DNA of 64,000 nt from Squalus acanthias (Eukaryota): NCBI GenBank assembly GCA_030390025.1, contig CM059430.1:74648001-74712000 (forward strand). The letters are read 5' to 3'. The notes beneath the pieces are model-generated. The model was not told where the DNA came from. It worked only from the letters and a program-made list of their open reading frames with translations, and made no database searches. Below are positions 11,426 to 41,154 of this stretch, piece by piece (the first letter of the stretch is position 1; each line of letters starts with the position of its first letter). A program made the translations under genes and the position numbers.

Positions 11426-11599
11426 TCATTGGACTATTGGTTCTCTGTAGGCCAGTCGTGCCTCTCTTTCATGCTGCTCTAACCTGATTGCGGCATATTC
11501 GGTATTCTTTCCCTTCTGTTTGTGCATACCTCTTTTCTCTGAACCAGTCATATTTAGAGCAGCGTAAGTCAACTTTTTGTCATCTGTTCGTTCCATGGT
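11426..11599 (-). CDS. Exon 6: terminal cytoplasmic exon with ITIM and ITSM
   Basis: Acceptor tttactcttacag|, phase 0. Translation: TMERTDDKKLTYAALNMTGSEKRGMHKQKGKNTEYAAIRLEQHEREARLAYREPIVQ*. ITIM LTYAAL at 11555-11572, ITSM TEYAAI at 11486-11503, TGA at 11426-11428. Confidence 0.88.
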   Translation of the reverse strand, partial: TMERTDDKKLTYAALNMTGSEKRGMHKQKGKNTEYAAIRLEQHEREARLAYREPIVQ

Positions 11600-13055
11600 C
11601 TGTAAGAGTAAAGTATATGATCAAATAATTTTCGTCATCAGTTTGCATGATTGCAACATAAAACATTTTTTGGTTCGAAAGTGTATTGCAGGATTATGAT
11701 ATCTTACTTAATGTAATTGTGAATATCAGTGTGATATCGATATTAAAACTTGTGATTTATTATATATATTGGCACTGCCCTATACAATATGCAAAATATG
11801 GGATCTGGTGAAGCCACTGCTTTACATTTCACGAGCACTGAAATGTAGTTTTCATTCTCGCGCCGTAACCAGAGATGCTGCCATCTGGTTGTGTACCTCA
11901 AACATGATGTGCCTGATATGTAAACATAGGTATTGACAGCACCGGAAGACCTCTAATAACCATCTCTTAACCCCTGCTTTTCAGAAGACATATGCTGATA
12001 TATTCCTTTCATGTCTAAATCGAATGATCCACTTAAAAACAATACTTACCCTTCTTTAATTCACCCAGACTGTCGAGGCCTGAGTTTCCCTTTGCATACA
12101 CACCCTATAGATTTTTTCAACGCTTTAAAATAATTGACAGAAAAGGTTAGGCAAGTAAAGGCAGAAACAGAAAACCATTTGGAAAGCTGGCGCTGGAATT
12201 CTGTGAAGGTTCTCCCGATCTTTCAAATCTTCGGCGGGAGATGGCTGGACCTCAGAGAAATGTTGTGAATGCTGATTTACAGTATTTATTGTTGGACCAG
12301 CTATCTTCACGCGAGGTTAGAGCAAGACATGGGAAGATGCACCGTGTAATTTCAGGGGCTCGCTATTTTCCCAACATTCATCTGCTCTCTTGAATTTAAA
12401 ACCATTCAACGTCACATCGTTACACCCAAAATTTATTTTGATTTTGTTTACGATTCCCTCTTAGAATATTGAAGCCCTTGAGTCTTCCTTTCACTATCTC
12501 AAACATCTGGCGCTGACTTAGTGCCTCCGTCTGCCCTAGCTATGGAGCATTGATACTAATCTAGTGCTTTTCCTCTATACCGTCTCCCACCCGGATGTCC
12601 ACTTTATGTTTACATGAACGCAACCACGCAAAAAACAGCAAACTAGTGGGATCAATATATGTCTCATCCAAAATCACTGATGACAAGATTAGGAGTACGC
12701 TTTTGTTTTTCTGATTTAATAATGACAGAATGCACACAGGTTTTCCTATTGCTGCCTCCTACCTGTTTCTTAAAGGATTTCAGGGTTTTTATTCTGAACG
12801 ACATCACCGAGATCGCTATACCATGCATTGAACGTTTTTTTGTGTGGAGGATATCACCCTGATATCAGCCAACAATTTCCTTTTTGAAGTTTTGCATCTG
12901 TCGACCCTTATACTACTCCTGCAATTTAGTTGAATTTAATTTAATTTTCCGGAATTTCCGTTTTCACACTAATTCGAATCAAGCATAAACCATAATCCCA
13001 CCATCCAGATGCGTCTTTTTAAGAATGCAAACCCCGAGTTTCTTACTATTTCGAT

Positions 13056-13799
13056 GGGCCGAAAATTGATCCCGGGACGCGAGAGTACGCACTGCGTACT
13101 CTCGCGTATTCCCACTCCAATTGCCGGTTTTCTGCATGCCCTGCGCATGCGCTGAAAACCGGCAATTGCTCTTCCGAAAAGGGGGCGGGGCCGGAGTGCA
13201 TCGCGTGCGCGCTACAGGCTGCGCGCACGCTGTGCACTTCATGCTTTGGACGCGCAGGTAAGTACTGAAGATTTTGGAAATGTAAAAAGGAGGAGTAAGA
13301 CCCGCTTTTAAGAAGGTAAGTAGTGAATTAAGTATTTTTTTGAATTTTTTTTTACAGGTATATCTATTTTATAGACTTTAAAGACAGGTAAGTTTATTTT
13401 TATAAGTTTTTAAAAGATTTTAAATTTTTTCAAAAATTTAATTTTTTTTTTAAAATGGTTAATTTAATTAACTATACTTATTTTATTAATGTGATGGTTT
13501 TTTTTTTAAATTTAATTGAGGTTTAGCTGTTATTTTGGGGGGGTGTAAGATTCATAAGTCTCTCAGCCATGCTGTGAGACTTATGAATGGAAGATGGTGT
13601 GCTGCCATTGGCTCTAACTGAGTCACGTGATCCCACAGCTCGCACGAATTAACTACGCCGCTGGGATACGCAAGCCCAGCACAGCTGATGTCTGGAACAT
13701 CAATTTCGTGCGAGCTGGATCAGAAAAAGCATAAGCGAGGTGAGACATCGCGGGAAAGGCTTACCCCCGCGGGAACAGAGCGAGATCAATTTCTGGGCC
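13056..13799 (+). mobile_element. ~740-bp TIR non-autonomous DNA element
   Basis: TIRs gggccgaaaattgatc / gatcaatttctgggcc, with AT on both flanks. Confidence 0.75.
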
Positions 13800-14705
13800 A
13801 TTATAACTCGAAACTCTAACACTAGCGATTAGCCTTGTGTTCTTCGACGTGTTACCTTCAATGATTGACTTTCTCCAATATTTGTAGGTTTGGGCTAAAT
13901 ACTCAGGATGTAATCTAATTGAAGGACCAAGAAGTTTTATTATGGCTTCCTACAACTTGTCTACTATTGCTTTGACTACATAGTTCAAGAGCGTTTTGGC
14001 ATAATTGAGAGATTCTCTGGATTGATTGACCGTATTGAGCATCAAATCAAATAAGACTCATGTCTTTCAGCTCATCTTCAGTTATTTCAACACAATTCAT
14101 GGGGAGGTATGTTGCCTATGTTTGTTCTTATGTGCAGTAGAATATATTTGTGAGCCTTAAATTTCAACTGATATTATTTTACCTACTAACATACGTCAGC
14201 TAAACCATTTATAATTTCTGCTGCTTCGTCCAATTTCAATGTTCCTGCGAGTTTGGTGTCATCTGTAAATATGACCAATTTCAATTTTATTTCTAAATCC
14301 AAGCCATTAGCGCTCGTAATTATTGTCCGTCCTTCTTGGCTGTAAATGAAATATCATATTTTCTTACTTCATTACTAATAAATACTATCATCAACAACAA
14401 TCCCAAAGCATCATCTATCTGAAACAGAAAGACACTCAAATATAAAATAACAGATCGCATTTGCTGATATCACCTAAATTCAACGAGTAAATCATCTCAA
14501 AATTCCACAGCAATTATGTGGCGGAAGATTGGCGGAACCCCAGTAAAGGGCGTAAATGGCAAAAAAGAACGGACATTGATGCCGTTTCTTCAGTATCCCA
14601 GTCGATTTTCCGTCAAAATTATCACGGGAAGTGTAGATTCGCGCCATAACTTTCCTACACTTGTTCCTCTTTCTCTTTATTTTTCTCACCCTATTGTGTA
14701 ACATT

Positions 14706-16171
14706 GGCCAGAATGTTGCGTTAAGAATAACGACGACGCCATCATTGCACATCGTTGTTATGAAGTCAACCGGACAGCAATTCCCGGCCTCCGCACATGT
14801 GCAGTAAACCAGGAAATCACGAAGTTGTTGTCCAAATTGCGCTGCTGCTGTCCAAGATTTGTGACGTTTCCGATAGACTCGGCATTGAAATGTATGTAAG
14901 GGCGTGAGGTTGCGGTACCCACCACGGGTACCTAATAAACACGGCAGAAAAAGTTAGGCCTTGTGAATTCAGGTATAATTGATTTTTTAACGGCGTGATA
15001 TATGTTTGTTACTGCCGAACAAGCACACTGGCACCGAAAATTTAATTTTAAATGGGCTGGAGATGAAACAAATAAAAATTAATATATTTTTTACTTTTTC
15101 CTTCTGTCTCTTTTAGCTCTCTCTCTCTTAATCATATCTTTCTTTCCCTCTCTTTATTATTCTTGCTGTGCATGATTGTACATTAACTTAAATATTGGCC
15201 AGGAATTTACGGGTCAATGATGGTGCCATCGTACGCACCCCGCAAGTTCCAGGATTCCGCATGCGATGCGTATGCGCGAAAACATGGAAATTGAGATCTC
15301 TCCTTGACAGATCGTAACCATCCGCTACAAATTCACTTACGCCGGTGCAGATTTGGGCTATTTGACCAACTACTGCCCAGGAAACACCCACCAAAATCTT
15401 ACACCTGGAAAAAGAATGCGTAAGGGTTAAAATAAATGTTGACACGAATTTGTTTACATGATTTAAACATTCAGTTACATTTAAAATTAATTTAGGTTAT
15501 TTCTGTCCCATTTAAAAATGTTTACGTTTCTTTTTCAAAAATTACATTTTTATTTTAAATGTTTAATTAAATGGTATTTAAATTAATGTTGAACCTGCGA
15601 TCATTTATTTTTATTTCAGTTTTATGAAGTTGTATTTATTAGGTGATTTCTATTATGCTTATGGCGATTCCGCTCGTAAATGGAATCCTCTTAAGCATAA
15701 TACGAATTCCCCTTTTTCAGTTGTTGGCCTGCTCCATTTGATCCCAGGGACACTTGCGAACTGCATGTGCCCCTGGGATGTGTAGACCTTTAAGCAGGCA
15801 TATGCCTGCAGGCCCAGGACCGCATGTGCCTGATGCTCCGCAGCCATCAGGTAAGTGCGGAGTTTTCTTGCAGTTCAGTGGCGTACGTTGATGGCAAACC
15901 TCTGACTGCAATTTGCTGGCCATTATAACTGACACTTCCTGGTTTAGACTCTGCGTACCTCTGTAATGATTCTTCAGTCTGATTGATTCAAGAGACACGC
16001 CCGTTGCTTCCCCTGTCCACACACGCCATAGATAGCATGTAGATGGTGCTGCGCTGAAAAAGTTCTCCCTTCACATTAAATTGCCTCGTAAAAGCCCAGG
16101 AAACGTCTGTGGGCTGTAAGTGCAATGAACGGCAATCGCCGTTCCTTCACGCTCACCGAAAAATCCAGGCC
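14706..16171 (+). mobile_element. TIR element (related to 36482-37267) carrying a nested TIR element
   Basis: Ends ggccagaatgttg / aaaatccaggcc. Internal homology with 36482-37267 (tttagactctg.gt..ctc.gt.a.gattcttca.tctgattg) resumes after the insert at 15197-15921. Confidence 0.65.
15197..15921 (+). mobile_element. ~725-bp TIR element nested in another
   Basis: Ends ggccaggaattt / aatttgctggcc, with the same internal blocks as 18731-19457 and 63007-63728. Confidence 0.7.
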
Positions 16172-16595
16172 AGTAAATCTGCTTGGTTAATCTCAACCTA
16201 TATGGAAGATGCAGGTAAAGGTAGTACGATAAGCAATTTAACACTAATAAGACAGGCTTTCAATTTTGCACCTATGGTCCAAAGTGTCTGAAGTGAAAAT
16301 CGCGGAACTACAGTGGCGTGTGAGTGTTTCTCCATCTTGGACTTCGTACACATAATCAGGACAGAGTTGGTTTGTTTTTCAGTTAAAACACTGTACGAGG
16401 ATACAGAGAAAGGAGACTAAAGTAGATTTTTTTCCTCCTCTAAATCTCACGTCATTCATCAGAATGAACATATGTACATCATCAAACATAAAAGTGTAAA
16501 CATTTAGTTAAACCTCTATAACATAAATTAATGTTTATTCAAACACAGCACCATCGCTTTATTCTTCAAACAAGGGGTGAAATATATAAACATAC

Positions 16596-16633
16596 CGGTT
16601 CTTCACAATGATGAGATCCATCTTGATTAATCT
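16596..16633 (-). CDS. Exon 5: short cytoplasmic exon
   Basis: Acceptor ttttattttgctggacacag|, donor CCG|GTATG, 38 nt, (E)INQDGSHHCEEP. It starts in phase 1 and ends in phase 0, which is the change needed to join the TM exon to the ITIM exon in frame. Confidence 0.75.
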
Positions 16634-17134
16634 CTGTGTCCAGCAAAATAAAAAATGCAGAAAAAACTGTGAATTTCTTGGTTACGGTGCAAGTGAGCAA
16701 GTAGAGATAAATGCAACTTCGACTCAGCCTACTGTCTGCCAGTATTTGGTGATGCCAATTCCACATATATTTCCAATCGCCGTGCATCTGAATCGTCCTG
16801 TATCATAATTACTGTCATGCACTTGAATTACTACATGCGAAAAATCACATAACCTAAATTGTACCTATATTAACAGTAACCATAACATGTTGTGATAGAA
16901 TTCAAAGTTAATTTGAATTATACATTCATCTTAGCTGCGTAAAAATACAAACATATATCTTGCATTAGCGGACGAAAAACGATTTCTGTATTTAAGTTAT
17001 CAGATGTCCATTCCAGTCCCACTAAAACATTATCATTAATGCCAGTGACAATAACGCCGCGTTTCTCGATCTACTGAGGATACCTTCCTTTTTTATTGAG
17101 GTTATTAAACATAAACCATTGAGCCGTTGCTTAC

Positions 17135-17248
17135 CTATGCGATTCCGCAACTGGCATCGTTTCCCAATTATGATCCCCAGCACGAGACATACGAGTCCAC
17201 TGACTACACATACAGCCGTCAGTAAGTATTCCAGTTTAATGCCAATGC
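17135..17248 (-). CDS. Exon 4: transmembrane segment
   Basis: Acceptor ttaattttacag|, donor G|GTAAG, 114 nt, phase 1-1. Translation: (G)IGIKLEYLLTAVCVVSGLVCLVLGIIIGKRCQLRNRI, a ~22-aa uncharged hydrophobic helix followed by basic stop-transfer residues. Confidence 0.9.
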
Positions 17249-18169
17249 CTGTAAAATTAATAAATATAACTGGAACGCTGTGCAATGTAGGAGTTACCAT
17301 ACACTCATGACTCCAAAAAGACTGTTTTTTCGGTACTGGAACATTATTCGTTAACTTGAACCATGCATTTAAAATCTACATTCATGAACTTTTTTTCACA
17401 TAGGCGCAACTAGAATGCGTTTAAAATTATAACAAATAACATTTTGATGAGATTAAGCTTGATTGTTGGTATTTTATCAGGCAATTCACCAGTGCCTGTT
17501 TCTTTGAATTTGTGTTCCTTTGTTCTGTTTTGTTTGGATAGCGCCAGTCAAAGCACACAAGCTAGCTGCGCCGTGCAATTGCTTGCGCCTATCTCAGGAC
17601 GACATACAGCAGACAGTTCGCAGTTTCAATCTTTTCCGCCAATAAGAAATATTGATCCAACTTTAAGAAGCTGTACCTCTACATTGACCTGAGGTCTGGG
17701 GCAGCCGACGTGTTCGGGACCGGGTGTGAACAGTGCAAGCATCATAGGAATGGAGACCCGGGTGAGCGGGAATAATACATACTGGAAGCTCTAAAACTGG
17801 AAAAGGATATCTGAGGGCATTGGCCCTGCAGGATCAGCAGGACCTGGGATTACGACAATTAGAACAGTTTCAAGGTAGTTGGAGACTGCAATCGGTCGCA
17901 GAGTCAGAGACAAACACAGTACGAGGAGAGATAGAGACGAGGTCACAGGAAGCTGAAGTGAAATAACACTCAATCAATTACTTTTAAATCGCTTTCGCGG
18001 CAAATTTCCAAACGTCAAAATTTAAAATTTAAAAGCGTTTGAAGAACTTACAAAGTCCAGATTGGAGAAATGATGTGACAGGCGAAGAGTTAGATCGAAA
18101 GTTAAAGAAACACTATTGGTGTGAGAAAGAATCTTGACAGGTAGCTCATGGAGTTAACAAGGGATATAG

Positions 18170-18660
18170 AGGCACAAGAGAATGTGCAAACACGATTTAC
18201 ATAATGATTCCAGAACTGAGAGGGTGTAACTATCAAAAACAATGAAGTGACTTTTCTTTTCTCAAGAAAAGACAAGACTGAGAGGTGAACTTATAAAGGT
18301 GTTTAACATCATGAAGGGGTTCGATTGGGTAGGCATAGATCAGGGGTTTTCACTTTTTGGGTAATCGGAAACAAATGGCCGTCAATATAACATAGTCACT
18401 GATTAATCCAATAAGACATTCAGCTGAAATGTCTTTTCTTAGTGATTCGTGACAATGTGGAACTCGCTACCATATGGAGTGGTTCAGGTGAAGAGCTAGA
18501 TGCATTTAAGCGGTATCTAAAGAAGCACATGAGGGAGAAAGGAATACAAGGCGATGTTGATAAGGTGACATTAAGTTAATAGACTGGGAGTAGGATCATG
18601 TGGAGCATAAACACCGGCTGTGCGGCCAAAGCCGTGTTTCTGAGCTGTAAATTATGTGTA
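18170..18660 (+). mobile_element. CR1 3' fragment
   Basis: Remnant RLRGELIKVF..MWNSLP and a CR1-type 3' tail. Confidence 0.75.
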
Positions 18661-18730
18661 ACATTGAAATATCTGATGGGGTACTACTTGTCGATACTAG
18701 ATGGGAACTTGAGCGGTAAATAGGGATAAC

Positions 18731-19457
18731 GGCCCTGAAATTCCGTTCCCTACGTGTGAGTAGACGCTGTGTACTCACCCGTAGGGCCAATGGAAGTGCC
18801 GGTTTCGCGACGGCACAGCGCATGCGCTGGAAAACGGAACTTCAACCGCGTGCGCCTGAGAGGCAGCGCCTACGCATCGAATTTCCGTGTTTTTTTCATT
18901 TGATGCAGTGCGGGTAAGTCCCTAGCAGCTGCGCGTGGAAAAAGCAGGTGCAAGGCCTGCGTTTAACAAGGTAAGAGGTGAAGTAAAAGTAAAATATTTT
19001 TTCCACAGGTTTATCATTTTAAAATACTTTAAATAAAGGTAAGTATATTTTTGGCCCCGTTAAAAATATTGAATTATTTTTTTTAAAAAATTTAATTTTT
19101 GTTTAAATTCGTTAATTTATGTAATTTATAGTTATTTAAAAAAATAATTTTTTAATAATTTATTTGAAGTTTTACTTTGGTTTTGGGGCCGATCTCTATT
19201 CATAGATTTGATGGGTCTTCCTGTCAAATCTATGAATAGAGATTCCCTGTTCCGATTTGCTCCTCATGGCCCACGTGATCCCAGGGACGCTGAGAACTAT
19301 CTGCGCCCCTGGGATATGCGTGCCCTGCCCGCCGGCAGCTGGAGCAGGCACAGGAACGGAATTCTGCGCGGGCCCAGAGCATAACGGTAGGCGCGCTTCT
19401 TAAGTGCAGCTCGGGGGCTTGCGTCCGCGGGAAGCCTCCGACCGGAATTTCTGGGCC
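18731..19457 (+). mobile_element. ~727-bp TIR non-autonomous DNA element
   Basis: TIRs ggccctgaaattccg / cggaatttctgggcc. Confidence 0.75.
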
Positions 19458-20929: not shown

Positions 20930-23900
20930 GCAGCACAGGAACCGGCAATTCTATCCAACTACTCTCTGCTGGTGTTCATACTCCTGACAAATCTCCCACA
21001 ACCCATTCCATCTATCACTTCTCAGCCTTTCAGCATAACTTTCCATTCCATTTTCTCTCATCTATTGGTATGGTTTCCTTTTGAAAGCATCTAAGCTATG
21101 TGCCTCAATTATTTCTTGTGGTAGTGAGTTCCACATTCTAACCACTCGTTGAGGAAAGACATTTCGACTTATTTCCATATTGGATTTATTAATAACTATC
21201 TCGTATTTATGGCCCTTAGTTTTGGATTCTCCCACAAGTGGAAACATTATCTCCAAATCCAGCCTTCCAACCATTCATAATTTTGAACACTTCTATCAGG
21301 TCTCCTCTCAGTCTTCTCTTTTCTAAAGAAAAAAGCCCAACCTGTTCAATCTTTTTCAATAGCTGTATTCTCCCAGTTTTGGTACTATCCGTGCATGTTT
21401 TGTCCTTTTCCCAGTGCTTCCCTATTATTTTTGTAGCATGGAGACCATAACTGTGCAACGTACGTTAAGCGTGGCCTGCTCAGGGTCCTATACATGTTTA
21501 AATAACTTCCCTACTTCTGAATTCTATACGCCAGGAAACAAATCCCTGTGCTTTGTTAGCATTTTAATTGTTTTTCTGACATCCCATGCTGCTTCTAATG
21601 ATTTGTGCTCCTGTATCCCGATATACTTTCGCTCTTCTACCCCATTCAATTAATTATTTTGCAAAGTGTAGGTTAGGTTTCTGTTTTTCCAACCAAAGTG
21701 TTTCATCTCACAATTATCTTACATTTATTATGTTCAAGTTCATTTGCCACTTAACTGCAAGTTTTCTAATACATTATTGTATTAGGTTGCATTCTTCCTG
21801 TGTTAGCTGTACCTCCAAGTTTGGTATCATCTGTCAATTTTGATGTTCAGTTAGTTATTCCTAAGTCACAATCATTAAGGTAAATTATCAATATCAATGG
21901 CCCCAGGACTGATCCTTATACAAGACGACTTTCTACCTTTCTCCAATCTGAATAACTACCCTTTACCCCATCTCTCTGCTTTCTGTTTTTTCAGCCAATT
22001 TGCTGTCCATTCAGCTATTTTTCCCCTGTCTCCTCATACCCTAACATTTGTCATGAATCTACTGTGTGGTACGTTATCAAACTCGTTTTTGAAAATCCAA
22101 TATGTGACATCTACTGCAATAAACATTGTCTGCTCGTTCTGTTCCTTCTTCAAAGAATGCTATCGGGTTAATTACCTTGACTTAGACGTTTGGAATCCAT
22201 GCTGTCTATTTTGTAGGATATTTTCTGTCTCTAAATGCGCTCTATGGTTGATTTTAGTATAGATTCCAGTACCTTACCTATCACTGACGTTAAGCTCACT
22301 GGTTTTGCACAACGATCGATGATGTGACGAATGTTGCTCACCATTTCTACAAACGATTTGGACTCGGGAAGCGGAAGTTCTATTTTAAAATTTGCAGATG
22401 TCCTAAAATTGGGGGTGTACTTAATACGGAAGAGGACTGTGACAAAATACAGGAAGACATTAAGTAACTTGCATAATGAGTGCGTAATTGCCAAATTGAC
22501 TTCAACATAGATAAGTGCGAGGTAATAGACTTTGGCAGGAAGAATAAAGGGGCCACATACTCCTTTGGAAAATAAGTGTCTAAATGCGGTAGAGCAGCAG
22601 AGGGATCTGGGGATACAGATAGACAGATCACTAAAAGTAGCGATGCAGGTAAATAAAGCCATAGAAAAAGCAATCAATGCACTGGGGGTCATTTATAGAG
22701 GGATAGCATTGAGAAGCAGGTCAGTTATTTTAAATGTGTATAGAACCACACTTGGAGCACTGTGAACAATTCAGCACTCCATAATATAAAGAGGATATAG
22801 AGGCACTGGAGAAGGCTAAACAAAATATATTTACTGGAATGATATCACAACTGAGAGGTTATACATATCAGGAAAGAGTGAACAGGCTTGGGCTCCTTTC
22901 TCTGGAAAAGAGAAGACTGAGGGATGACCTGATGGAAGTCTTCAAGATTATGACAGAGTTTTATAGGGTAGACGTAGAGACGCTGTTTCTACTTGCAGGC
23001 GAGACCAGAACTAAGGGCCATAAATATAAGATAGTCACTAAGAAATTACAAAAGCTATTCAGGAGAAAGTTCTTTACCCAGAGAGTGGTGAGAATGTGGA
23101 ACTCGCTACCACAGAGAATAGTTGAGGCGAATACCATAGAACCATTCAAGTTAATGCTAGGTAAGCACTTGAGGGAGAAAGCATTAGAAGGATATGTTGA
23201 TGGTGTTAGATGAAGAGGTGTGGGGGGAGGCTTTTCTGGAGCATAAACACTGGCCAGAACCTGTTAGGCCGAATGGCTTGTTTCTGTGTTGTAAATACTT
23301 TTGCAATTTTATTAAACTAGTGCGTCTGCTATCTCCTCTCTAAATTACTTGAGTATGCGTGGGTGCATAGCATCCGTATCTGTGGTTTTATCATCTTTCA
23401 GTTTTCCTAGTTATTCAACTATTTTCTCCGTTTCTGTCCCAACTTTATTAATATTCTTGTTAACTCATCCTCTCGTGACGTGTCTATTTCGTTATCTTCT
23501 TCAGTAACAACTGAGGCGAAGTAATTATTCAATAGTTCTGCCATTTCTCTGTCATTACCCGTGAGTTAATGTTAGTAATCCTTTAGGGGCCCTATCGCTA
23601 CTTGAATTTTAATTTTGTTATTTGTATGTCTATAGAACATTTTGTTATTACTTTTTATATTCCTTGATAATTTGATTTGGTAATTTCTCTTGGTGTTCTT
23701 GCTGTTATCCTAACTTCTCTCCTTCGTATAGGGTTTTGACCTCCCCACCCCCTATTTATTACCCAATACTTCTTATGTGTCCTTTTCTTTAAGATTCACT
23801 GTTCTGATCCTTACTGCAAATTATTGCCTCCAGTTAATCCATCATGTTTCAAGTACTACTTACATTGCTATGCTAACAGTTTAACTTATTATTCCTCTCT

Positions 23901-24900
23901 CTTTGTTTTTAATATATATTTTCTGTTTAACGTTGATGACTTCATCCGATCTCTGGCCATTCGTGTTATCTTTATTCTATCCTTTAGTTTGTCCTTTAAT
24001 ATATTTCCCTTGTTCTTTTATTGTTAGTTTTCTGTAATTTCGAGCAGTTCCTTCCTCCCTTGTTATGTGTGTAAAGTGTTATTTACAGTCCATTTATCCT
24101 TTCCGCTCGGACCTTGACCTGCTCGGTTCAGATGCAAACCAGCCCAACGGTACAACTCCTTCCTGTCCCAGTACTGGTGCCAGTGACCCACTTGCTGACA
24201 CAAATCTTTTAGCCACGTGTTGACATTCCTAATCTATTCTTCCCCGTGCCAATTTGCACGTGGATCGGCAATAATCCAGAGATTATTACCCTTGATATCT
24301 TGCTTTTCAATCTTTCCTATATCATTGGTTCCGACATAGATTACAACAACTGGTTCCCACCCCTCACTTTCCAATTTTTTTCCAGCAGTTTTGAGATTTC
24401 CCTTATCCTTGATCCTGACTGCAAAGAATACTATCTACCACTAATTATTAAAAACCTACAACTATAACCATTCTACTCTACTTCTCCTCCCCTTCGACAG
24501 CCTACAGCTCCACAGTGTGTTGATCGACATTTTAGTTGACCTTCCCACAGTCTCACTTACTTTCCTCACATGTATCGTGTAAGTTATACCTGTTGGGCAG
24601 CGGCACTGTCTGCTGGGCCTCCTACACCAACTCGCCAACGTTCCCATTACCCGGCAGACAGACAGCCACACTCTCCCCTTACTGCACCTGTGCTGGCCTT
24701 TGTTGTTTGAATTTCCTCTGCAGTAAATTATCCAATTATTCCTCCTCGACCTCCTCCTTATTTGTCTCGAGGCAGAGAACTTTCTTGGAGATGTCGCAGT
24801 CTGGGTCACTGTCGATGTCCGCAAACACCCTCGTACTACAATTCCGGCATACAGCCTGCACTGCCATATCATTATTAATTAATTCATTGATTTATTTGTT
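20930..24900 (-). mobile_element. Old CR1 (minus strand) interrupted by an opposite-strand CR1 3' fragment
   Basis: Minus-strand RT remnants at 21062-22300 and ORF2/ORF1 remnants at 23310-24900 flank the plus-strand insert. Confidence 0.7.
22310..23300 (+). mobile_element. CR1 3' fragment nested in an older CR1
   Basis: QRDLGIQID..., LEKRRLRDDLMEVFKIM..FFTQRVVRMWNSLP and a 3' tail. Confidence 0.85.
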
Positions 24901-25601
24901 GGTTATACGTAGTTTATTTCTTGAAATATTTGGTCACTTGAAGTCTAGATTTATTAAATAGGTGGAGTTAGCTTATGTTAAATAAATTAGTATTTTTAAC
25001 GTGATTAATTACGTAGTTATTCATCAGCTATTAGCGTCTTTAAGTGGAGTTAGAATGTAATCACATAACCACTTTGAATTAAACTTTCTTTCAATAATAT
25101 TAAATCCGTACTAAGTCAAGTTTAACACTAACCACTGAGGATAACAAACACACAAAGTGATATCTAGATACTTTCCGATATACTTATTTTAGTTTTCCTC
25201 GAGTTCTGCTGATCCTCTTTGTGTGTTGATTATGACATCGCGTTTTCTATTTCCACTGGTGCGATTATTTACCTATTTACTGTTGCCCCTTGGTTTAAAG
25301 CACTTCGCACCTCTTTCCCCCGATGCACCGAATTCACACTCTCGACAAATTCCCGTTGCTACTCTGTTTAGTAAGCCACTCTCTTCAGCATATATTCCCA
25401 GCACTTTTCGTATATATTACTTAAGTACAACAACTTCCCATCGGCAGACAAACGGGACGATACGAGACCAGGGCATCTCGGACAGCAATTTACTGATTTC
25501 CACATTTAACTTCGCATGTACGGTCCCCGGAATTTGGCGGCCGATTTCCACGTAAATAACGGTGAGCGCTCTTAATAAAGACTTACTCCTTGGCATCTTA
25601 C

Positions 25602-25913
25602 CTGGGTTACAATTGGAGACCAAATAAACAGCTAATTTCGGTGTTTGAAGGGTGGGGTGAGATACCAAACAAGTGTAAGGGGTCCCTTTCTGGACTGACT
25701 GTGTCTGTTGCAGAATACTTGACGCTTCATATAGTCCCGCTGAGTTCAGCTGCTTTGTGGTTGTTATCCCGGTTACAACGTTGCTTTTATTTTTGTACCA
25801 GCTGAAGGTGATCGTCTTCGGGTAAAAGTCAACCGTTTCACAAACGAGAAGAGGATAATTGTTTGAATTCCCGTCAGGTGTTATGGAGACAATCGTCGGG
25901 TTAGCTGGCGGAG
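25602..25913 (-). CDS. Exon 3: Ig C1-set domain
   Basis: Acceptor cccctctgtag|, donor G|GTAAG, 312 nt, phase 1-1, open frame. Translation: (A)PPANPTIVSITPDGNSNNYPLLVCETVDFYPKTITFSWYKNKSNVVTGITTTKQLNSAGLYEASSILQQTQSVQKGTPYTCLVSHPTLQTPKLAVYLVSNCNP. C1 hallmarks: C-x4-FYP-x2-I-x3-W and YTC-x-V-x-H-x2-L. Confidence 0.93.
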
Positions 25914-26949
25914 CTACAGAGGGGATCAGGGAAAATCATATATACGTTCAGCATTTTACATTTATAACATTTTTATATCCCAATTCCAAGTAAATTGAGA
26001 TAATTCATAAGTTGCATTTAACTGAATTGAAAAAAAAATGAACTTGACGGCCATCCTATACTTTTCCAAATACTCAAGGAACAGCCGCAATAATGGACCG
26101 TTTCTTCACAGCTATCACAAAAGTCTCACATACAGTGAATAATTTTCAAATGCAATCATCTGTGCGATGTGGGTAAATGATGCTTCAACCAACAAATCCA
26201 AACAATTACAGTGCGATTAATGACCAGTTCATTGTTTATAGTGATATTGATTAGCGGAGGAATGTTGGGCAGAACACTTGGGGAACAGTTTTTTTTCTTT
26301 CCAGCAATGCTGTGGGGATTTTAACTCCATAAAGAACAGCAGGCAGGACTTGGTTGGATTCTGACCTGAAATACAGCAGGTCCAACAGAGCAGTAATCCC
26401 TCTCTACTGAAGTAAACAGCCCAGTTTAATTGTGTAAATCCTAGATATTAGCTTGACTCCAGAGTCTTTTACGAACGTACCAATAGGCGAGACATGACGG
26501 ATAGATAAAGACCTTCTGGCTCACACACCGCACCAACGGCAGCCTGTTGCAGAGTTCCACTATTCTGTGGAAAAAAGAGCCACCTCCTTGCATCTAACCC
26601 AGATCAAGCCTTATACAACTTAGATTTGTTAGCCCTGGTCCAACCTAACCTATTCAATTAAAACAAACTGTCAACTGGAACAAAATGTGTTCCCTTCATT
26701 ATCTTATAAACCTTAAGCAGATCACTTGTATGTTTACGCTTCTCTAAAGTTTAGCGTCCCAACTCTTTTAGCCTTTCTTCATCACCTTCGTAGCTTTAGG
26801 GGAAGACCGGCGTAAACTCCAGAGAAACGGGTAAAAATTACTGTTTATGCCGTTTCATCAGGGTATCCGCAGATATATAGTACTGAAGGCATGACGGAGA
26901 ACACTACATAATTTCTCACCACAATTATTCACAGAAAAAGAGCTCGGAT

Positions 26950-29745
26950 AAGAACATAAGAACATACGAAATAGGAGCAGGAGTAGACCAATCGGCCCCT
27001 CGAGCCTGCTCCTCCATTCAATGAGATCATGGCTGATCTGAACCAACCTTAACTCTAAAGAACACAAGAAGCAGGAGCAGGACCAGGCCACTCGGCCCCT
27101 GGGCCCGCTCTGCCACCCACAGGGCCTTGACCGATCCGAACTCAAACTCATGTCCAATTTCCAGCCCGCTCCCCGTAACCCCTGATACCCTTTACTTCTA
27201 GGAAACGGTCTATTTCTGTTTTAAATTTATTTAATGAAGTAGCTTCCACAGCTTCCTGGGGTAGCAAATTTCACAGACCCACTACCCTCTGAGTGAAAAA
27301 GTTTCTCCTCATCTCAGTTTTGAACGAAGAGCCCCTTATTCTAAGATTATGTCCCCTAGTTCTAGTTTCACACATCATTGGGAACATCCTCACCATGTCC
27401 ACCCGATCAAGCCTCTTCACAATCTTATATGTCTCAATAAGATCGCCTCTCATTCTTCTGAACTCCAATGAGTAGAGTCCCAATCTACTCTACCTCTCCT
27501 CATATGTCCACCCCCTCATCCCCGGAATTAACCGAGTGAACCTTCTTTGTACTGCCTCGAGAGCAAGTATGTCTTTTCTTAAGTATGATCACCAAAACTG
27601 TATGCAGTACTCCAGGTGCGGTCTCACCAATACCCTATACAACTGCAGCAATACCTCCCTGTTTTTATATTCTATCCCCCTAGCAATAAAAGCCAACATT
27701 CCATTGGCTTTCTTGATCACCTGCTGCACCTGCATACTAACTTTTAGATTTTCTTGCACCAAGACCCCCAGATCCCTTTGAACAGCAGTACTTTCAAGTT
27801 TCTCGCCATTAAGATAATAACTTGCTCTCTGATTTTTCCTGCCAAAGTGCATAACCTCACATTTTCCAATATTGTATTGCATCTGCCAAATCTCTGCCCA
27901 CTCACCCAGACTGTCTATATCCCCTTGTAGGTTTTTTATGTCCTCTTCACTCTCTACTTTCTCTCCCAACTTTGTATCATCTGCAAACTTTGATATGTTA
28001 CACTCGGTCCCCTCCTCCAAATCGTTAATATAGATTTTAAAGAGTTGGGGACCCAGCACCGACCCCTGCGGAACACCACTGGCTACTGGTTGCCAGTCCA
28101 AGAATGAACCATTTATCCCAACTCTCTGCTTCCTCTTAGATAACCATTCCTCCACCCATGCCAGAATATTACCCCCAATCCAGTGATTTTTTATCTTGAG
28201 TAATAATCTTTTATGTGGCACCTTGTCGAATGCCTTCTGGAAGTCTAAATACACTACATCCACTGGTTCCCCTTTATCCACCCTGTACGTTATGTCCTCA
28301 AAGAACTCGAGCAAATTTGTCAGACATGCCTTCCCCTTCATAAAGCCATGCTGACTTTGTCCTATTAAATTATGTTTATCTAAATGTTCCGTTACTGTCT
28401 CCTTAATAATAGACTCCAAAATTTTACCCACCACAGATGTTAGGCTAACTGGTCTATAATTCCCAGCCTTCTGCCTACAACCCTTTTTAAATAAGGGTGT
28501 TACATTAGCAGTTTTCCAATCTGCCGGGGCCTTTGCTGAGTTCAGGGAGTTTTGGAAAATTATTACCAAAGCATCCACAATTCCTACTGCCACTTCTCTC
28601 AAGACCCTAGGATGTAAGCCATCAGGTCCAGGGGATTTATCCGCCTTGAATCCCATTATTTTACTGAGTACCAATTCCTTAGTAATTTTAATCGTATTTA
28701 GCTCCTCCCCCGCTAGAGCCCCCTGTTTGTCCAGTGTTGGGATATTCTTAGTGTCCTCTACCGTAAATACTAAAACAAAATATTTGTACAGCATTTTTGC
28801 TATCTCCATGTTTCCCACCATTAATTTCCCGGTCTCATCATCTAAGGGACCTACCTTTACCTTAACCAGCCTTTTTCTTTTTAAATAACTATAGAAACTC
28901 TTGCAATCTGTTTTTATATGTTTTGCTAATTTATTTTCATAGTCTATTTTCCCTTTCTTAATCAATCCTTTAGTTACTTTTTGTTGTCTTTTGAAGACTT
29001 CCCAATCTTCTAAACTTCTACTAACTTTGGCTAACTTATATGTCCTTGTTTTTAGTTGGATACTTTCTTTAATTTCTTTACTTAGCCATGGATGGCTGTC
29101 ATTTCTTTTACACCCTTTTTTCCTCAGTGGAATATATTTATTTTGAAAGTTGTAAAATAACTCTTGAATGAACACCACTGCTCATGTACCATCTTACCCT
29201 TTAATCTATTTTCCCAGTCCACTTTAATCAATTCTGCTCTCATGCCATCATAGTCTCCTTTATTCAAGCTCAGCATGCTTGTTTGAGAACCAAGCTTCTC
29301 ACCCTCTAATTGCATATGGAATTCAACCATGTTATGGTCACTCATTCCAAGGGGATCCTTAACTAGGACATTATTAATTAATCCAGACTCATTACACAGT
29401 ACCAGGTCCAAGGTTGCTTGCCCCCTTGTAGGATCAGTTACATACTGCTCAAGAAATCCATCCCTAAGACACTCAATAAACTCTTCCTCAAGGCTGCCCT
29501 GCCCAATTTGATTTGTCCAGTTAATATGATAGTTAAAATCCCCCATAATTATAGCTGTTCCCTTATTATATGCCCCAACTATTTCCTGATTAATACTTCT
29601 TCCAACAGAGTTGCAACTATTACGAGGCCTATAAACTACGCCCACCGGGGTTTTTCCCCTTATTATTCCTAATCTCTACCCAAACTGTTTCATTATCCTG
29701 ATCTTTTTTGACCCAATATCATTTCTCTGTATTACAGTGATTCCT
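26950..29745 (-). mobile_element. Young 5'-truncated CR1 LINE in intron 2 of the receptor gene
   Basis: 529-aa RT ORF at 27589-29178 (KSPGPDG, NYRPVSLTS, QHGF, YLDFQKAFDKV, GVPQGSVLGP, FADD), an endonuclease ORF at 29124-29645, and few frameshifts. Confidence 0.95.
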
Positions 29746-30926
29746 TTCTCCGCCAAGATAACATCATTAGCTGGATATGTGATTCACGTAGAAATGTATT
29801 CACTGTATAATCTGAGGAATTAAATACCCTCTCAAAGGATACTCCAGCAACTTTTTTCTGCAAATTTTCTCCTTCCAACTCACTGTTCGTTACAAACAGC
29901 GCTATGTGCCAAAAGCAAACTCAAATTAAATCTCATGCCATGGCCACAGCTTTTCATTAAACACTGTTCAAGAAAAGTAGTCGCTTTAATCTATAACAAA
30001 TAATTAATTTAACTGATTTAATTAGTAATCCGTAATATTCATTAAAATAATTATGAATATGAATAGCTATCGGAATCTTGGAGCGGCTTCAGTGGGGATA
30101 GAAACTTCAAACATCAGTGAATACACATCAATCCTAACGATTTCCTGTGAAGCTCTCAGCGACATACTGAGGATCCACAAGGTGCAATTCAATCGATCTT
30201 ATAATAATAAAGTCTTTATGCAGCAATTGCTGAAAATCGTAGTTTGTATCAGGTCCGGGATATGTTTAAACGTATTTCTCATTAATATTTTTGAGAGATT
30301 GCGAGTTGCGTTGCTTTATTCACGGGACTGAGATGTGCCGTTTACTCAGAATCCTTAAAGTACACCCGTCGTTTGGGGAATTTCCTATTAACTACTTACA
30401 CTGGAGAACGGCTGGAACTCATTTAACGATACCAGAATTTTTTGGGACGTGTTTGACATTAATGCTTGCTATCAGTATTAGAATTGTACTAGATCTCTAT
30501 ACTCGATTATTAAACGATCAAACTTGCAGCCTTTAGGACCGCCAAAATGTACCGAATATAACATTTCTAAGAAAGGCATCATTACAAACGTAGTACCAAT
30601 CAGAGCGGATTCAGATAGTTTGAGTCGAAAAGTTATTAACCCATTTTCAAATAATTTCTCAATCTCCATAACTTGGCCAGAGCTTCAATAACAGAACACA
30701 TTTAAAAAAAATATAAATATTGCTCTTCCAATTTATGATTACATCGTGTACGTTGAAAGCATTTCATTTAGAATTGTATCGTATATATTGAGGATTAATA
30801 TACAGGTGACGAAACGCAAACGATTCACGAGAACAGTCATATAAGGCACCAATCATTCTGCCTTACTTATTCATATTTTCAGTTATTTTAATTATCTGTG
30901 AGAGAAATCCCTGCAATGCCACCTAC

Positions 30927-31244
30927 CGTGGACAACAATCGTTGATCCAGTTCCGTTTCTGATCGAGTTTCTCTGTTGTTTGACTCCGCAGTAATAAACC
31001 CCAGCGTCCTGGAAACGGACATCAAGGATCTGCAAGGAGCCCCGTCCTTTCCTCAAGAAATGTTGTTTCCTCGTGTCTGAGCTGGGTTGCAGAAATATAC
31101 TTTCGCCTAGTTTCCACCAGATAACATTCACTTCTGAAGTATCTGGAAAAGGAGGGAACGAACAAGCGAAGGTAATGTTTGCACCGATCGTAACAATCTT
31201 GTGTTGGGGGCTTTGGGACACTTTGAACACAGCATCGCCAAAAA
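30927..31244 (-). CDS. Exon 2: Ig V-set domain with germline-joined J-like G strand
   Basis: Acceptor ttttcttccacag|, donor G|GTAGG, 318 nt, phase 1-1. Translation: (I)FGDAVFKVSQSPQHKIVTIGANITFACSFPPFPDTSEVNVIWWKLGESIFLQPSSDTRKQHFLRKGRGSLQILDVRFQDAGVYYCGVKQQRNSIRNGTGSTIVVH. Canonical C, W, LxI..DxGxYYC and GxGS/T motifs are present. Confidence 0.95.
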
Positions 31245-31365
31245 CTGTGGAAGAAAAATAAAAACATACAGCCATCAATTAAACATATCAAACCTGCCGG
31301 GAAATTGGTGATAGGCAAACATATATAGACGGATAAGAGTGGACACAAAGAAGGAAAAAAAATAC

Positions 31366-31420
31366 TTGTTGAGATAATCCCCAGGATCGCGGTGCACTGA
31401 TGCACAGCGCGCACAGACAT
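31366..31420 (-). CDS. Exon 1 (signal peptide) of VJ-C1-TM-ITIM/ITSM IgSF receptor
   Basis: ATG at 31420 encodes MSVRAVHQCTAILGIIST+A. Phase-1 donor A|GTATT, a 121-bp intron to the V exon, and a TATAAAA box 53-59 bp upstream. Confidence 0.8.
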
Positions 31421-31472
31421 ATTGAACAAAGGAAATAACTATTTTCTGGCAATAAACAGGGAACACTGATGC

Positions 31473-40859: not shown

Positions 40860-41154
40860 NNNNNNNNNNNNNNNNNNNNNNNNNNNNNNNNNNNNNNNNN
40901 NNNNNNNNNNNNNNNNNNNNNNNNNNNNNNNNNNNNNNNNNNNNNNNNNNNNNNNNNNNNNNNNNNNNNNNNNNNNNNNNNNNNNNNNNNNNNNNNNNNN
41001 NNNNNNNNNNNNNNNNNNNNNNNNNNNNNNNNNNNNNNNNNNNNNNNNNNNNNNNNNNNNNNNNNNNNNNNNNNNNNNNNNNNNNNNNNNNNNNNNNNNN
41101 NNNNNNNNNNNNNNNNNNNNNNNNNNNNNNNNNNNNNNNNNNNNNNNNNNNNNN
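40860..41154. other. Assembly gap (295 N)
   Basis: Run of n. Confidence 1.

What the first reader, a model, noticed from the sequence alone, without database searches (positions are those of the whole stretch)
11426..31420. Non-rearranging VJ-C1 'antigen-receptor-shaped' inhibitory receptor (336 aa) hidden among transposons
Seen in the sequence: six exons (55+318+312+114+38+174 nt = 337 codons) with GT-AG junctions and compatible phases, forming one open frame, L-V(J)-C1-TM-cyt. Established: a V domain with a J-like GxG strand joined to a C1-set domain is the layout of a TCR or Ig light chain, and C1 domains are largely confined to Ig/TCR/MHC/B2M/tapasin/SIRP-type proteins. Mammalian SIRPs are V-C1-C1, while PD-1 and NKp30 have a single V. 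Non-rearranging VJ-C1 genes in sharks and amphibians have been discussed as models of the pre-RAG receptor. Inference: this gene has one V, one C1 and an ITIM+ITSM tail, so it may be a cartilaginous-fish inhibitory receptor that bridges antigen-receptor and SIRP/PD-1 architectures. It could be an unannotated family or a member of the UrIg2/VJC1-like group; orthology cannot be determined from this window.
Basis: partly seen in the sequence, partly recalled or inferred. Interest (0 to 1): 0.9.

Follow-up and report, generated by a model that had tools for sequence, protein, structure and literature searches.

The report
Shark VJ-C1 inhibitory receptor gene
This is a real, transcribed shark gene for a cell-surface receptor that looks like one antigen-receptor chain but needs no gene rearrangement and carries an "off-switch" tail; it belongs to a large, poorly named receptor family found only in sharks, rays and chimaeras.

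Summary
Six minus-strand exons of 55, 318, 312, 114, 38 and 174 nt, all with GT-AG introns, encode leader, V, C1, transmembrane and tail. Pfam calls V-set (9.8e-10) and C1-set (2.6e-14). One RNA contig joins V to C1 exactly at the predicted junction. The other four junctions rest on colinear orthologue proteins.

The gene is not a hidden or unannotated family. RefSeq already models orthologues in nine shark species, under inconsistent automatic names: SIRP-alpha-like, Ig-lambda-like, CD276 homolog, B7-H6-like and tapasin-related-like. V and C1 trees both place the window in one starred clade with one row per species.

That clade sits inside a cartilaginous-fish family of VJ-C1 receptors. Among the 84 proteins I held, 34 have ITIM/ITSM tails and 13 have short tails.

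It is not UrIg or UrIg2, not NKp30, and not demonstrably a SIRP orthologue. SIRP-alpha, B7-H3, UrIg2 and Ig chains all match about equally well.

The most likely function is an inhibitory receptor that recruits SHP phosphatases, with a conserved unknown ligand. This is inferred, not shown.

The scan noted many similar genes elsewhere in this genome.

The parts
31366..31420 (-). Exon 1: ATG plus first part of a split leader (18 codons + 1 nt), GT donor at 31365-31364
   Evidence: Sequence read. It is 11 of 18 identical to the N-terminus of orthologue P0158 and 8 of 18 to P0156. No RNA contig covers it.
30927..31244 (-). Exon 2: end of leader plus a V-set domain that runs straight into a J-like G strand (germline-joined VJ)
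   Evidence: Pfam V-set 9.8e-10 and family V HMM 138.9 bits. RNA contigs end exactly at 30927. It is 74% identical to Pristiophorus P0161.
30928..30957 (-). J-like strand N-G-T-G-S-T-I-V-V-H (G-x-G bulge; N-G-T is also an N-glycosylation sequon), with no intron or RSS before it
   Evidence: Translation. N115, G116 and G118 are invariant or nearly invariant in 30 family proteins. No heptamer or nonamer occurs in 30850-31300.
27592..29675 (-). LINE remnant (endonuclease + reverse transcriptase ORFs) inside intron 2; not part of the gene product
   Evidence: Pfam RVT_1 2.4e-30 and Exo_endo_phos_2 2.8e-10. Very high word depth in all four runs.
25602..25913 (-). Exon 3: C1-set immunoglobulin domain plus stalk with one cysteine
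   Evidence: Pfam C1-set 2.6e-14 and family C1 HMM 131.5 bits. The RNA contig begins at 25913 and joins to 30927. It is 78% identical to P0161.
17135..17248 (-). Exon 4: juxtamembrane, transmembrane helix without charged residues, basic stop-transfer
   Evidence: Sequence and translation. tblastn hits from 6 of 9 orthologues.
16596..16633 (-). Exon 5: 38-nt cytoplasmic exon (phase 1 in, phase 0 out)
   Evidence: Best splice score among 183 candidates. The same core gives the three best homology scores to orthologue tails. AG and GTATGT were read. The exact boundaries are inferred.
11426..11599 (-). Exon 6: cytoplasmic tail (57 codons) plus TGA stop
   Evidence: Sequence. It is 86% identical to P0161 and 67% to P0158.
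11555..11572 (-). ITIM-type motif L-T-Y-A-A-L
   Evidence: Translation. The motif is present in 7 of 8 orthologue tails (degenerate in P0151).
11486..11503 (-). ITSM-type motif T-E-Y-A-A-I, with its tyrosine 23 residues after the ITIM tyrosine
   Evidence: Translation. A T-x-Y-A-A-[IV] motif occurs at the same spacing in 8 of 8 orthologue tails.

Best explanation
The locus is an intact, transcribed gene for a 336-residue type I membrane receptor of the immunoglobulin superfamily. It has a split leader, one germline-joined VJ-type V domain, one C1-set domain, a short stalk, an uncharged transmembrane helix, and a cytoplasmic tail of about 79 residues with an ITIM followed 23 residues later by an ITSM.

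It is the orthologue, in this probably squalomorph shark, of a single-copy gene conserved across sharks. That gene sits inside a large VJ-C1 receptor family found so far only in cartilaginous fish. The family also has short-tailed members, some with basic residues in the membrane span, so it looks like a paired inhibitory/activating receptor family in the manner of SIRPs.

Proposed mechanism (inferred): the V domain binds a conserved, probably endogenous ligand. Src-family kinases then phosphorylate the two tail tyrosines. The tandem SH2 domains of SHP-1 or SHP-2 dock on the ITIM-ITSM pair and damp activation of the cell.

Shown here: gene structure, V-to-C1 splicing, domain types, orthology and family. 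Inferred: surface expression, ligand, phosphatase recruitment and cell type.
For: - Exons and splice sites were read directly.
- Pfam calls V-set and C1-set.
- A spliced RNA contig joins 25913 to 30927, and depth is confined to exons.
- Orthologues of 311-337 residues with the same layout exist in 9 shark species and map onto the window exons.
- V and C1 trees each put the window exon in the same starred 11-row clade (99 and 98 SH-aLRT), with a topology like the species tree.
- Within the orthogroup, V (mean 62.1% identity) is about as conserved as C1 (65.9%). This argues for a conserved ligand.
- The ITIM is kept in 7 of 8 orthologue tails and the ITSM in 8 of 8, at fixed spacing.
- Family census of 84 proteins: 80 are V1C1. 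Of 64 with a predicted TM, 34 carry ITIM/ITSM-type motifs and 13 have tails of 30 residues or fewer, several of them with R or K in the span.
- AlphaFold model of orthologue P0158: both Ig domains mostly above pLDDT 90, a TM helix and a disordered tail.
Against: - Only one junction is seen in RNA, in one contig of one run, with 30 letters on the shorter side. The runs are labelled 'RNA?' by guess.
- The leader exon is not covered by any contig.
- ITIM and ITSM are short motifs, and no binding data exist.
- Tissue and cell type are unknown.
- The TM and tail census used a crude hydropathy and regex script on gene models that include isoforms and fragments.
- Restriction to cartilaginous fish rests on 30 names looked up among the top 150 of 517 hits and on a word-filtered profile search. 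Distant bony-vertebrate relatives could have been missed.
Confidence: 0.72

Rival explanations
1. The gene is a true SIRP family member: the cartilaginous-fish counterpart of SIRP-alpha that has one C1 domain instead of two.
For: - NCBI's pipeline names many family members 'tyrosine-protein phosphatase non-receptor type substrate 1-like', including the Rhincodon orthologue P0157.
- SIRP-alpha 2wng_A is among the best PDB matches: 1.8e-32 for the family profile and 59.4 bits for orthologue P0158.
- SIRP-alpha aligns colinearly over V-C1-C1 with the two-C1 relative P0059 (57.5 bits, residues 15-297 against 8-304).
- Two of 84 relatives have V-C1-C1.
- The family combines ITIM tails and short-tailed forms, as SIRP-alpha and SIRP-beta do (recalled).
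Against: - SIRP-alpha scores no better than CD276 (66.7 bits), a chimeric Ig chain or UrIg2.
- No SIRP is among the best 60 PDB matches for the window V exon, the window C1 exon or the V-only profile.
- This gene and all of its orthologues counted in the census have one C1.
- Synteny was not tested, and no tree with SIRP sequences could be built.
Confidence: 0.2
2. The gene belongs to the shark 'NCR3 (NKp30) family' described by Kinlein et al. 2021, whose members would then include forms with a C1 domain.
For: - In Pristis pectinata the V-only isoform of a family gene (P0060) is named NCR3-like by NCBI, while its V-C1 isoform (P0207) is named SIRP-alpha-like.
- V-only proteins lacking the C1 domain occur in relatives: 3 listed as isoforms (P0122, P0144, P0108) and 1 as a separate gene model (P0079).
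- The J-like strand carries an N-G-T sequon. NKp30 has the same (recalled).
Against: - NKp30 is not among the best 60 PDB matches for the V exon or the V profile.
- This gene has a C1 domain and no charged TM residue.
- Unchecked scan notes place NKp30-like single-V genes and MHC genes on other pieces of the assembly.
- I saw the paper only as a citation in two reference lists and could not read it.
Confidence: 0.12
3. The gene is a B7-family member (like B7-H3 or B7-H6), that is, a ligand rather than a receptor.
For: - CD276 is the best PDB sequence match of orthologue P0158 (66.7 bits, colinear V-C).
- PD-L1 V domains fill much of the best-60 list for the window V exon.
- In the structure search, B7-H6 4zso_E has the highest identity among the two-domain matches (26% over 192 residues, rmsd 4.3, Z 15.0).
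- NCBI names several members 'CD276 antigen homolog' or 'NCR3 ligand 1-like'.
Against: - All Z scores are tied within about 1.5.
- The V domain has a J-like G-x-G strand.
- The V-only profile matches TCR, IgNAR and CD79b V domains over the whole domain.
- The conserved ITIM-ITSM tail is a receptor feature.
- The next non-family hit in the profile search, a PD-L1, scores only 9.5e-14, against 5e-48 or better for the family.
Confidence: 0.06
4. The gene is a relic close to the pre-RAG antigen-receptor chain, a sister of UrIg/UrIg2 and Ig/TCR.
For: - The VJ-C1-TM order with a split leader is that of a TCR chain.
- The V-only profile's best whole-domain PDB matches are a TCR scFv (52.7 bits), shark V-NAR (52.6) and CD79b (49.9).
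- The C1 exon's best matches are Ig constant domains, UrIg2 and MHC class II beta.
- UrIg2 is the second-best match of the family profile (1.3e-36).
- Unchecked scan notes place relatives among Ig light-chain clusters on other pieces.
Against: - No rooted tree was made.
- The similarities are generic for V and C1 domains.
- UrIg2 gains score from its three C domains.
- The N-G-T sequon replaces the aromatic residue of antigen-receptor J motifs.
- Linkage to the MHC or the antigen-receptor complex was not tested.
Confidence: 0.1

Closest known systems
SIRP-alpha / SIRP family (mammals, birds)
   Same: Both are non-rearranging V domains with a J-like strand, followed by C1-set domain(s), a TM and a tail with ITIM-type tyrosines. 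Both families have short-tailed partners. SIRP-alpha is among the best PDB sequence matches.
   Different: This gene has one C1 domain, not two. It has two tyrosine motifs (ITIM + ITSM), whereas SIRP-alpha has four (recalled). Its sequence is no closer to SIRP than to B7-H3, Ig or UrIg2. The ligand and synteny are unknown.
UrIg and UrIg2 (elasmobranch non-rearranging Ig-like genes; PMC12227049)
   Same: Both have a single-exon VJ domain with a split leader followed by C1-type domains. Both are found in cartilaginous fish. UrIg2 (PDB 9dmx) is a top match.
   Different: UrIg has three C domains and is secreted. UrIg2 has 9-11 C domains. Neither paper section I read mentions an ITIM tail. This gene has one C1 and an inhibitory-type tail and belongs to a multigene family.
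NKp30 (NCR3) and the shark NCR3 family
   Same: Both are non-rearranging VJ-type V domains. V-only isoforms of relatives are auto-named NCR3-like.
   Different: This gene has a C1 domain, an uncharged TM and an ITIM/ITSM tail. NKp30 is not among the best 60 PDB matches. I could not read the shark NCR3 paper.
B7 family (CD276/B7-H3, B7-H6, PD-L1)
   Same: Both have a V plus C ectodomain with phase-1 exons. The predicted two-domain geometry is extended. These are the best sequence and structure matches of the orthologue.
   Different: This gene has a J-like strand in V, a true C1-set call by Pfam, and a conserved ITIM-ITSM tail.
PD-1 / BTLA-type checkpoint receptors
   Same: All have a membrane-proximal ITIM followed about 23-25 residues later by an ITSM (spacing of PD-1 and BTLA recalled).
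   Different: Those have a single Ig domain and no C1. No specific sequence similarity was seen: they are absent from the best-60 lists.
TCR and Ig light chains
   Same: The V(J)-C1 order is the same, and for TCR the TM position too. Foldseek's best matches are Fab light chains.
   Different: This gene has no RSS and no separate J segment. The superposition has rmsd 9-10 A, meaning a different inter-domain angle. There are no charged TM residues, and the gene has its own signalling tail.

Membership tests
Cartilaginous-fish VJ-C1 receptor family (unnamed; RefSeq models under mixed automatic names) | V and C1 domains match family profiles and carry the invariant residues (W-W after strand C, D-x-G-x-Y-x-C, N-G-x-G strand, C1 cysteines and C-x-V-x-H) | tested here: met
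   The window V exon scores 138.9 bits and the C1 exon 131.5 bits against HMMs cut from alignment A1. Invariant columns are listed.
Cartilaginous-fish VJ-C1 receptor family (unnamed; RefSeq models under mixed automatic names) | The gene falls in a supported clade with named members in both domain trees | tested here: met
   It falls in an 11-row clade, SH-aLRT 99 for V and 98 for C1. These are quick IQ-TREE searches on about 100 columns, with only two outgroup rows.
SIRP family | N-terminal V domain with a germline J-like strand | tested here: met
SIRP family | Two membrane-proximal C1-set domains (V-C1-C1) | tested here: not met
   The gene has one C1 exon, and no second one lies in the window. 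Eighty of 84 family proteins are V1C1 and 2 are V1C2.
SIRP family | Sequence groups with SIRPs rather than with other V-C1 proteins | tested here: inconclusive
   SIRP-alpha scores 59.4 bits, against 66.7 for CD276 and 48.7 for UrIg2. SIRPs are absent from the best-60 lists. No tree with SIRP sequences was possible.
SIRP family | CD47 binding, SHP-1/2 recruitment and conserved synteny | not testable with these tools
No binding data can be computed.
UrIg / UrIg2 | VJ exon followed by three (UrIg) or nine to eleven (UrIg2) C1-type domains | tested here: not met
   PMC12227049, sections 4 and 7, against the one C1 found here.
UrIg / UrIg2 | Linkage to the MHC (UrIg) or to the IgH/TCR-alpha-delta complex (UrIg2) | not tested
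   Only unchecked scan notes are available: MHC genes lie on other pieces.
NKp30 / NCR3 | Single VJ-type V domain with no C domain, and a charged TM residue for adaptor pairing (recalled) | tested here: not met
   A C1 exon is present and spliced to V. The TM has no K, R, D or E.
Rearranging antigen-receptor chains (TCR, IgL) | Separate V and J segments flanked by recombination signal sequences | tested here: not met
   V runs into the J-like strand in one open exon. No CACAGTG or ACAAAAACC occurs on either strand in 30850-31300.
B7 family | V-C ectodomain whose sequence groups with B7 members | tested here: inconclusive
   CD276 is the best PDB match of P0158, and B7-H6 shows 26% identity in the structure search with tied Z scores. 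However, the V-only profile prefers TCR, IgNAR and CD79b.

The most novel reading that the evidence does not exclude
The cartilaginous-fish VJ-C1-TM family, of which this conserved single-copy gene is the slowest-evolving member seen here, descends directly from the non-rearranging, TCR-chain-shaped receptor that existed before the RAG transposon split a VJ exon. It would be a membrane-bound, self-signalling sister of UrIg/UrIg2 and of Ig/TCR. SIRPs, NKp30 and perhaps B7-H6 would be its reduced or rearranged derivatives in other vertebrates.
Probability: 0.1. Interest if true: 0.85.

Novelty: new variant of a known kind. Interest (0 to 1): 0.45.

Why it matters
V(J)-C1 receptors that do not rearrange are the main candidates for what antigen receptors looked like before RAG. 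So far the discussion rests on SIRP, NKp30, and UrIg and UrIg2.

Here the same chain layout as a TCR chain (leader, VJ, one C1, TM) occurs in a large family across sharks, rays and a chimaera. The family has inhibitory and short-tailed members, and includes at least one gene kept single-copy across sharks.

Public annotation scatters the family under five unrelated automatic names, so it is easy to overlook. Naming it and placing it relative to SIRP, NCR3, B7 and UrIg would add a data point to the origin of antigen receptors and of paired inhibitory/activating receptors.

If it turns out to be simply the shark SIRP or NCR3 family, the finding is ordinary.

Tried and rejected
Things that led nowhere:
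- A second V or C1 exon hidden in the 8.3-kb or 5-kb introns. None was found by tblastn with the window's own exons or with 18 family proteins.
- RSS-type heptamer or nonamer around the V exon. None was found.
- Reference sequences of SIRP, NKp30, B7-H6 and UrIg for rooted trees. The word-indexed homologue search did not return them: one search gave only a bat PD-L1 and a nurse shark TCR-gamma outside the family, and one search had only 148 candidates and 5 hits. PDB chain ids are not accepted by protein comparison. The trees therefore contain only two weak outgroups.
- Foldseek against the PDB is swamped by Fab light chains. VIA-align gives tied Z scores of 14-15 for many Ig proteins. Structure therefore does not discriminate between families.
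- Literature. Ten searches found no paper describing a cartilaginous-fish VJ-C1-ITIM family. The corpus lacks most subscription journals.
- Five papers were not held: PMC10530332 (UrIg 2023), PMC6761025 (Ohta 2019), PMC3709836 (Flajnik 2012) and Kinlein 2021, the last tried by DOI and as PMC8273117. A prior description, especially in Kinlein 2021, cannot be excluded.
- Supplements of PMC12227049 (fig. S1-S2, table S1) were not seen and may list related genes.
- Pseudogene reading: rejected. The frame is intact, the splice sites are canonical, the V and C1 exons are transcribed and spliced together, and orthologues are conserved.
- Two separate genes (V in one, C1 in another): rejected. The spliced contig and the identical clade in both domain trees argue against it.

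Full report
**What is in the sequence**

The gene lies on the minus strand. I read each boundary directly.
- Exon 1 is 31420-31366. It starts with ATG, holds 18 codons plus one base, and is followed by a GT donor.
- Exon 2 is 31244-30927. It follows a pyrimidine tract and AG, and ends at G|GTAGGT.
- Exon 3 is 25913-25602, from AG to G|GTAAGA.
- Exon 4 is 17248-17135, from AG to G|GTAAGC.
- Exon 5 is 16633-16596, from AG to CCG|GTATGT.
- Exon 6 is 11599-11426, starting after AG and ending in TGA.

The first four junctions are phase 1, as is usual for immunoglobulin-superfamily exons. The last is phase 0.

Each exon was translated and searched on its own. Where a whole protein was needed I used natural orthologues returned by the tools.

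**Domains**

- Pfam calls exon 2 a V-set domain (9.8e-10) and exon 3 a C1-set domain (2.6e-14).
- The V exon runs without interruption from the Y-Y-C of strand F into N-G-T-G-S-T-I-V-V-H. This is a J-like G strand with the G-x-G bulge.
- No RSS heptamer or nonamer consensus occurs on either strand in 30850-31300. The VJ unit is therefore germline-joined.
- The TM exon has no charged residue in the membrane span.
- The tail exon carries L-T-Y-A-A-L (ITIM pattern) and T-E-Y-A-A-I (ITSM pattern), with the tyrosines 23 residues apart.

**Transcription and splicing**

The one sequencing-run search, using leader, intron 1 and V exon, found four small runs from two studies holding 24-45% of the sampled words. 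Their kind is only guessed as RNA.

Laid on 25550-31450, all four runs have contigs on the V exon. X1 and X3 also have contigs on the C1 exon. Apart from the transposon, the intron bins are empty, except a depth of 1.06 in one bin of X4.

In X1 a 177-nt contig (depth 11.5) covers 25767-25913 and continues for 30 letters at 30927. It skips 5013 nt bounded by CT..AC on the plus strand, which is GT..AG for the gene. Another X1 contig ends exactly at 30927.

This confirms the V-to-C1 junction and shows the runs behave as RNA. It is one contig in one run. The leader exon is not covered in any of the 4 runs.

**Orthologues support the rest of the model**

An exhaustive phmmer search with the V exon against 1.84 billion representatives gave 517 hits at E of 0.001 or less. 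Among the giant multi-Ig proteins were many single-domain matches of 40-65% identity in proteins of 230-420 residues.

The best such match, P0003 (Mustelus asterias, 335 residues), has the same leader-V-C1-TM-tail order. Searching with P0003 returned orthologues in Heterodontus, Rhincodon, Heptranchias, Stegostoma, two Scyliorhinus species, Pristiophorus and Chiloscyllium.

Mapped back on the window by tblastn:
- all 9 orthologues hit the V and C1 exons;
- 8 of 9 hit the tail exon;
- 6 of 9 hit the TM exon;
- nothing else in the window is hit.

The closest is Pristiophorus P0161, at 74.5% identity in V, 75% in C1 and 86% in the tail. The window therefore comes from a shark not among these species, probably a squalomorph.

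The leader is 11 of 18 identical to that of Heptranchias P0158. For exon 5 there are 183 frame-compatible AG..GT candidates in the intron. The three with the best similarity to orthologue tails all share the core 16633-16596. The 38-nt version also has the best splice score. Its boundaries remain an inference.

**The orthogroup**

I cut V and C1 segments out of all stored proteins with HMMs built from alignment A1 and built quick IQ-TREE trees. The V tree has 106 rows and 102 columns. The C1 tree has 93 rows and 98 columns.

In both trees the window exon sits in the same starred clade of 11 rows (SH-aLRT 99 and 98), with one gene per species plus one fragment. The branching order resembles the species tree:
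- Heptranchias branches first;
- the window pairs with Pristiophorus;
- Heterodontus follows;
- then the orectolobiforms and the carcharhiniforms.

These trees have few columns, only two long outgroup rows (a bat PD-L1 and a nurse shark TCR-gamma) and a short search. I trust the clade, not the deep order.

Within the orthogroup the V domain (mean 62.1% identity over 45 pairs) is about as conserved as C1 (65.9%). The ITIM is kept in 7 of 8 orthologue tails and is degenerate in P0151. The ITSM-type motif is kept in 8 of 8 at the same spacing.

**The wider family**

A profile of 30 members (A1) found 43 further or same proteins at E of 5e-48 or better. All came from sharks, rays or skates, or Callorhinchus. 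After these came only a bat PD-L1 (9.5e-14) and a nurse shark TCR-gamma (1.2e-11). That search is word-filtered, so it can miss distant relatives.

I looked up names for 30 proteins.
- Twenty-two are V-C1 or V-only family-type proteins with a named organism, and every one is chondrichthyan.
- Four are unnamed fragments from Logan or ENA, whose organism is not given.
- Three come from two turtles and a viper. These, and Heterodontus P0095, are multi-V proteins without C1.

NCBI's automatic names for family members are inconsistent: SIRP-alpha-like (PTPNS1-like), immunoglobulin lambda-1 light chain-like, CD276 antigen homolog, NCR3 ligand 1-like, tapasin-related-like, TCR beta-like and MHC class II beta-like.

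In a crude census of the 84 stored proteins scoring at least 75 bits for V and 70 bits for C1 (isoforms and fragments included):
- 80 are V1C1, 2 are V1C2, 1 is V2C1 and 1 is V2C2;
- of the 64 with a predicted TM, 34 have ITIM/ITSM-type motifs, 17 have long tails without them, and 13 have tails of 30 residues or fewer, several with R or K in the span.

This is the pattern of a paired inhibitory/activating receptor family. Some gene models skip the TM exon (P0161, P0162). Others lack the C1 domain (P0122, P0144, P0079, P0108, P0060). Both skips keep the reading frame because the exons are phase 1.

**Comparison with known families**

| Query | Best PDB matches |
|---|---|
| Window C1 exon alone | Ig constant domains, UrIg2 (9dmx), MHC class II beta, CD276 |
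| Window V exon alone | Multi-Ig adhesion proteins; as single domains, PD-L1 |
| V-only profile (A2) | Whole-domain matches: TCR scFv 52.7 bits, shark V-NAR 52.6, CD79b 49.9 |
| Orthologue P0158 | CD276 66.7 bits, chimeric Ig 63.5, SIRP-alpha 59.4, SIRP-gamma 56.9, UrIg2 48.7 |
| Two-C1 relative P0059 | UrIg2 58.4 bits; SIRP-alpha 57.5, colinear over V-C1-C1 |
| Family profile A1 | Chimeric Ig, UrIg2 (1.3e-36), SIRP-alpha (1.8e-32) near the top; chains with several C domains gain score |

No SIRP, NKp30 or PD-1 appears in the best-60 lists for the V exon or the V-only profile.

The AlphaFold model of P0158 has mean pLDDT 77.5, with both Ig domains mostly above 90. In Foldseek it matches Fab light chains only at rmsd 9-10 A.

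In the representative-wide aligner it gives tied Z scores of 14-15 for many Ig proteins:
- B7-H6: 26% identity, 192 residues, 4.3 A;
- SIRP-gamma: 6.2 A;
- UrIg2: 10.2 A.

The family is therefore roughly equidistant from B7, SIRP, UrIg2 and antigen-receptor chains at the level these tools resolve.

UrIg has three C domains and is secreted. UrIg2 has nine to eleven C domains (PMC12227049; sections 4 and 7 read). This gene is neither.

It fails the V-C1-C1 criterion of SIRPs and the single-V, charged-TM criterion of NKp30 (the latter recalled). In one sawfish gene the V-only isoform is auto-named NCR3-like and the V-C1 isoform SIRP-alpha-like. That shows how the labels depend on which domains are present.

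**Function**

The most likely function is an inhibitory receptor. The steps from ligand binding to phosphorylation of the two tyrosines and docking of SHP-1 or SHP-2 are inferred from the motif pair, its fixed spacing and its conservation. Nothing here tests them.

Similar conservation of V and C1 in a single-copy orthogroup suggests a conserved, probably endogenous ligand rather than pathogen-driven diversification. This too is inference.

**Prior knowledge and novelty**

Ten full-text searches found no description of such a family. Several key papers are not held, above all Kinlein et al. 2021 on the shark NCR3 family. I saw that paper only as a citation.

The gene models themselves are public. 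The first-stage scan noted many similar VJ-C1 genes elsewhere in this genome, on the same piece from about 12.5 Mb before to 2 Mb after the window and on other pieces. Those notes are unchecked.

I rate this a real and well-supported gene. It is a new variant of a known kind (SIRP-like non-rearranging VJ-C1 receptors) and of moderate interest.

Noticed in passing
window 27592-29675 (minus strand): A LINE remnant with endonuclease and reverse-transcriptase ORFs (529 and 173 aa) lies in intron 2, on the same strand as the gene. Its words have very high depth in all four runs.
   Followed up: partly
window 44336-47251 (minus strand): An uninterrupted 971-aa ORF lies in a G+C-rich, strongly skewed stretch. 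It has weak reverse-transcriptase (2.4e-05) and GIY-YIG (4e-04) matches, both below Pfam's cut-offs. It looks like a Penelope-like retroelement.
   Followed up: partly
window 25603-25620 (minus strand), end of the C1 exon: The stalk of the window's protein has a cysteine (V-S-N-C-N-P) where 7 of 8 orthologues with a stalk have serine. It is a lineage-specific change that could allow a disulfide-linked dimer.
   Followed up: no
relatives P0161, P0162 (no TM) and P0122, P0144, P0079, P0108, P0060 (no C1): Some gene models in other species skip the TM exon, giving a possible soluble form. Others lack the C1 domain, giving an NKp30-like single-V form. Both keep the frame because the exons are phase 1.
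   Followed up: partly
relatives P0059 (Amblyraja), P0062, P0163 (S. torazame), P0164 (Callorhinchus): Some family members have other domain counts: V-C1-C1 (the SIRP layout), V-V-C1 and V-V-C1-C1.
   Followed up: partly
proteins P0094, P0111, P0133 (two turtles, a viper) and P0095/P0199 (Heterodontus): These proteins have three or four tandem V domains, most with a J-like G-x-G strand, and ITIM-bearing tails but no C1. They are auto-named FcR-like 5, pIgR-like, otk-like and SIRP-beta-2-like, and appear to be a different family.
   Followed up: no
window 40860-41154: This is a run of 295 N (assembly gap or masked stretch). I left it untouched.
   Followed up: no
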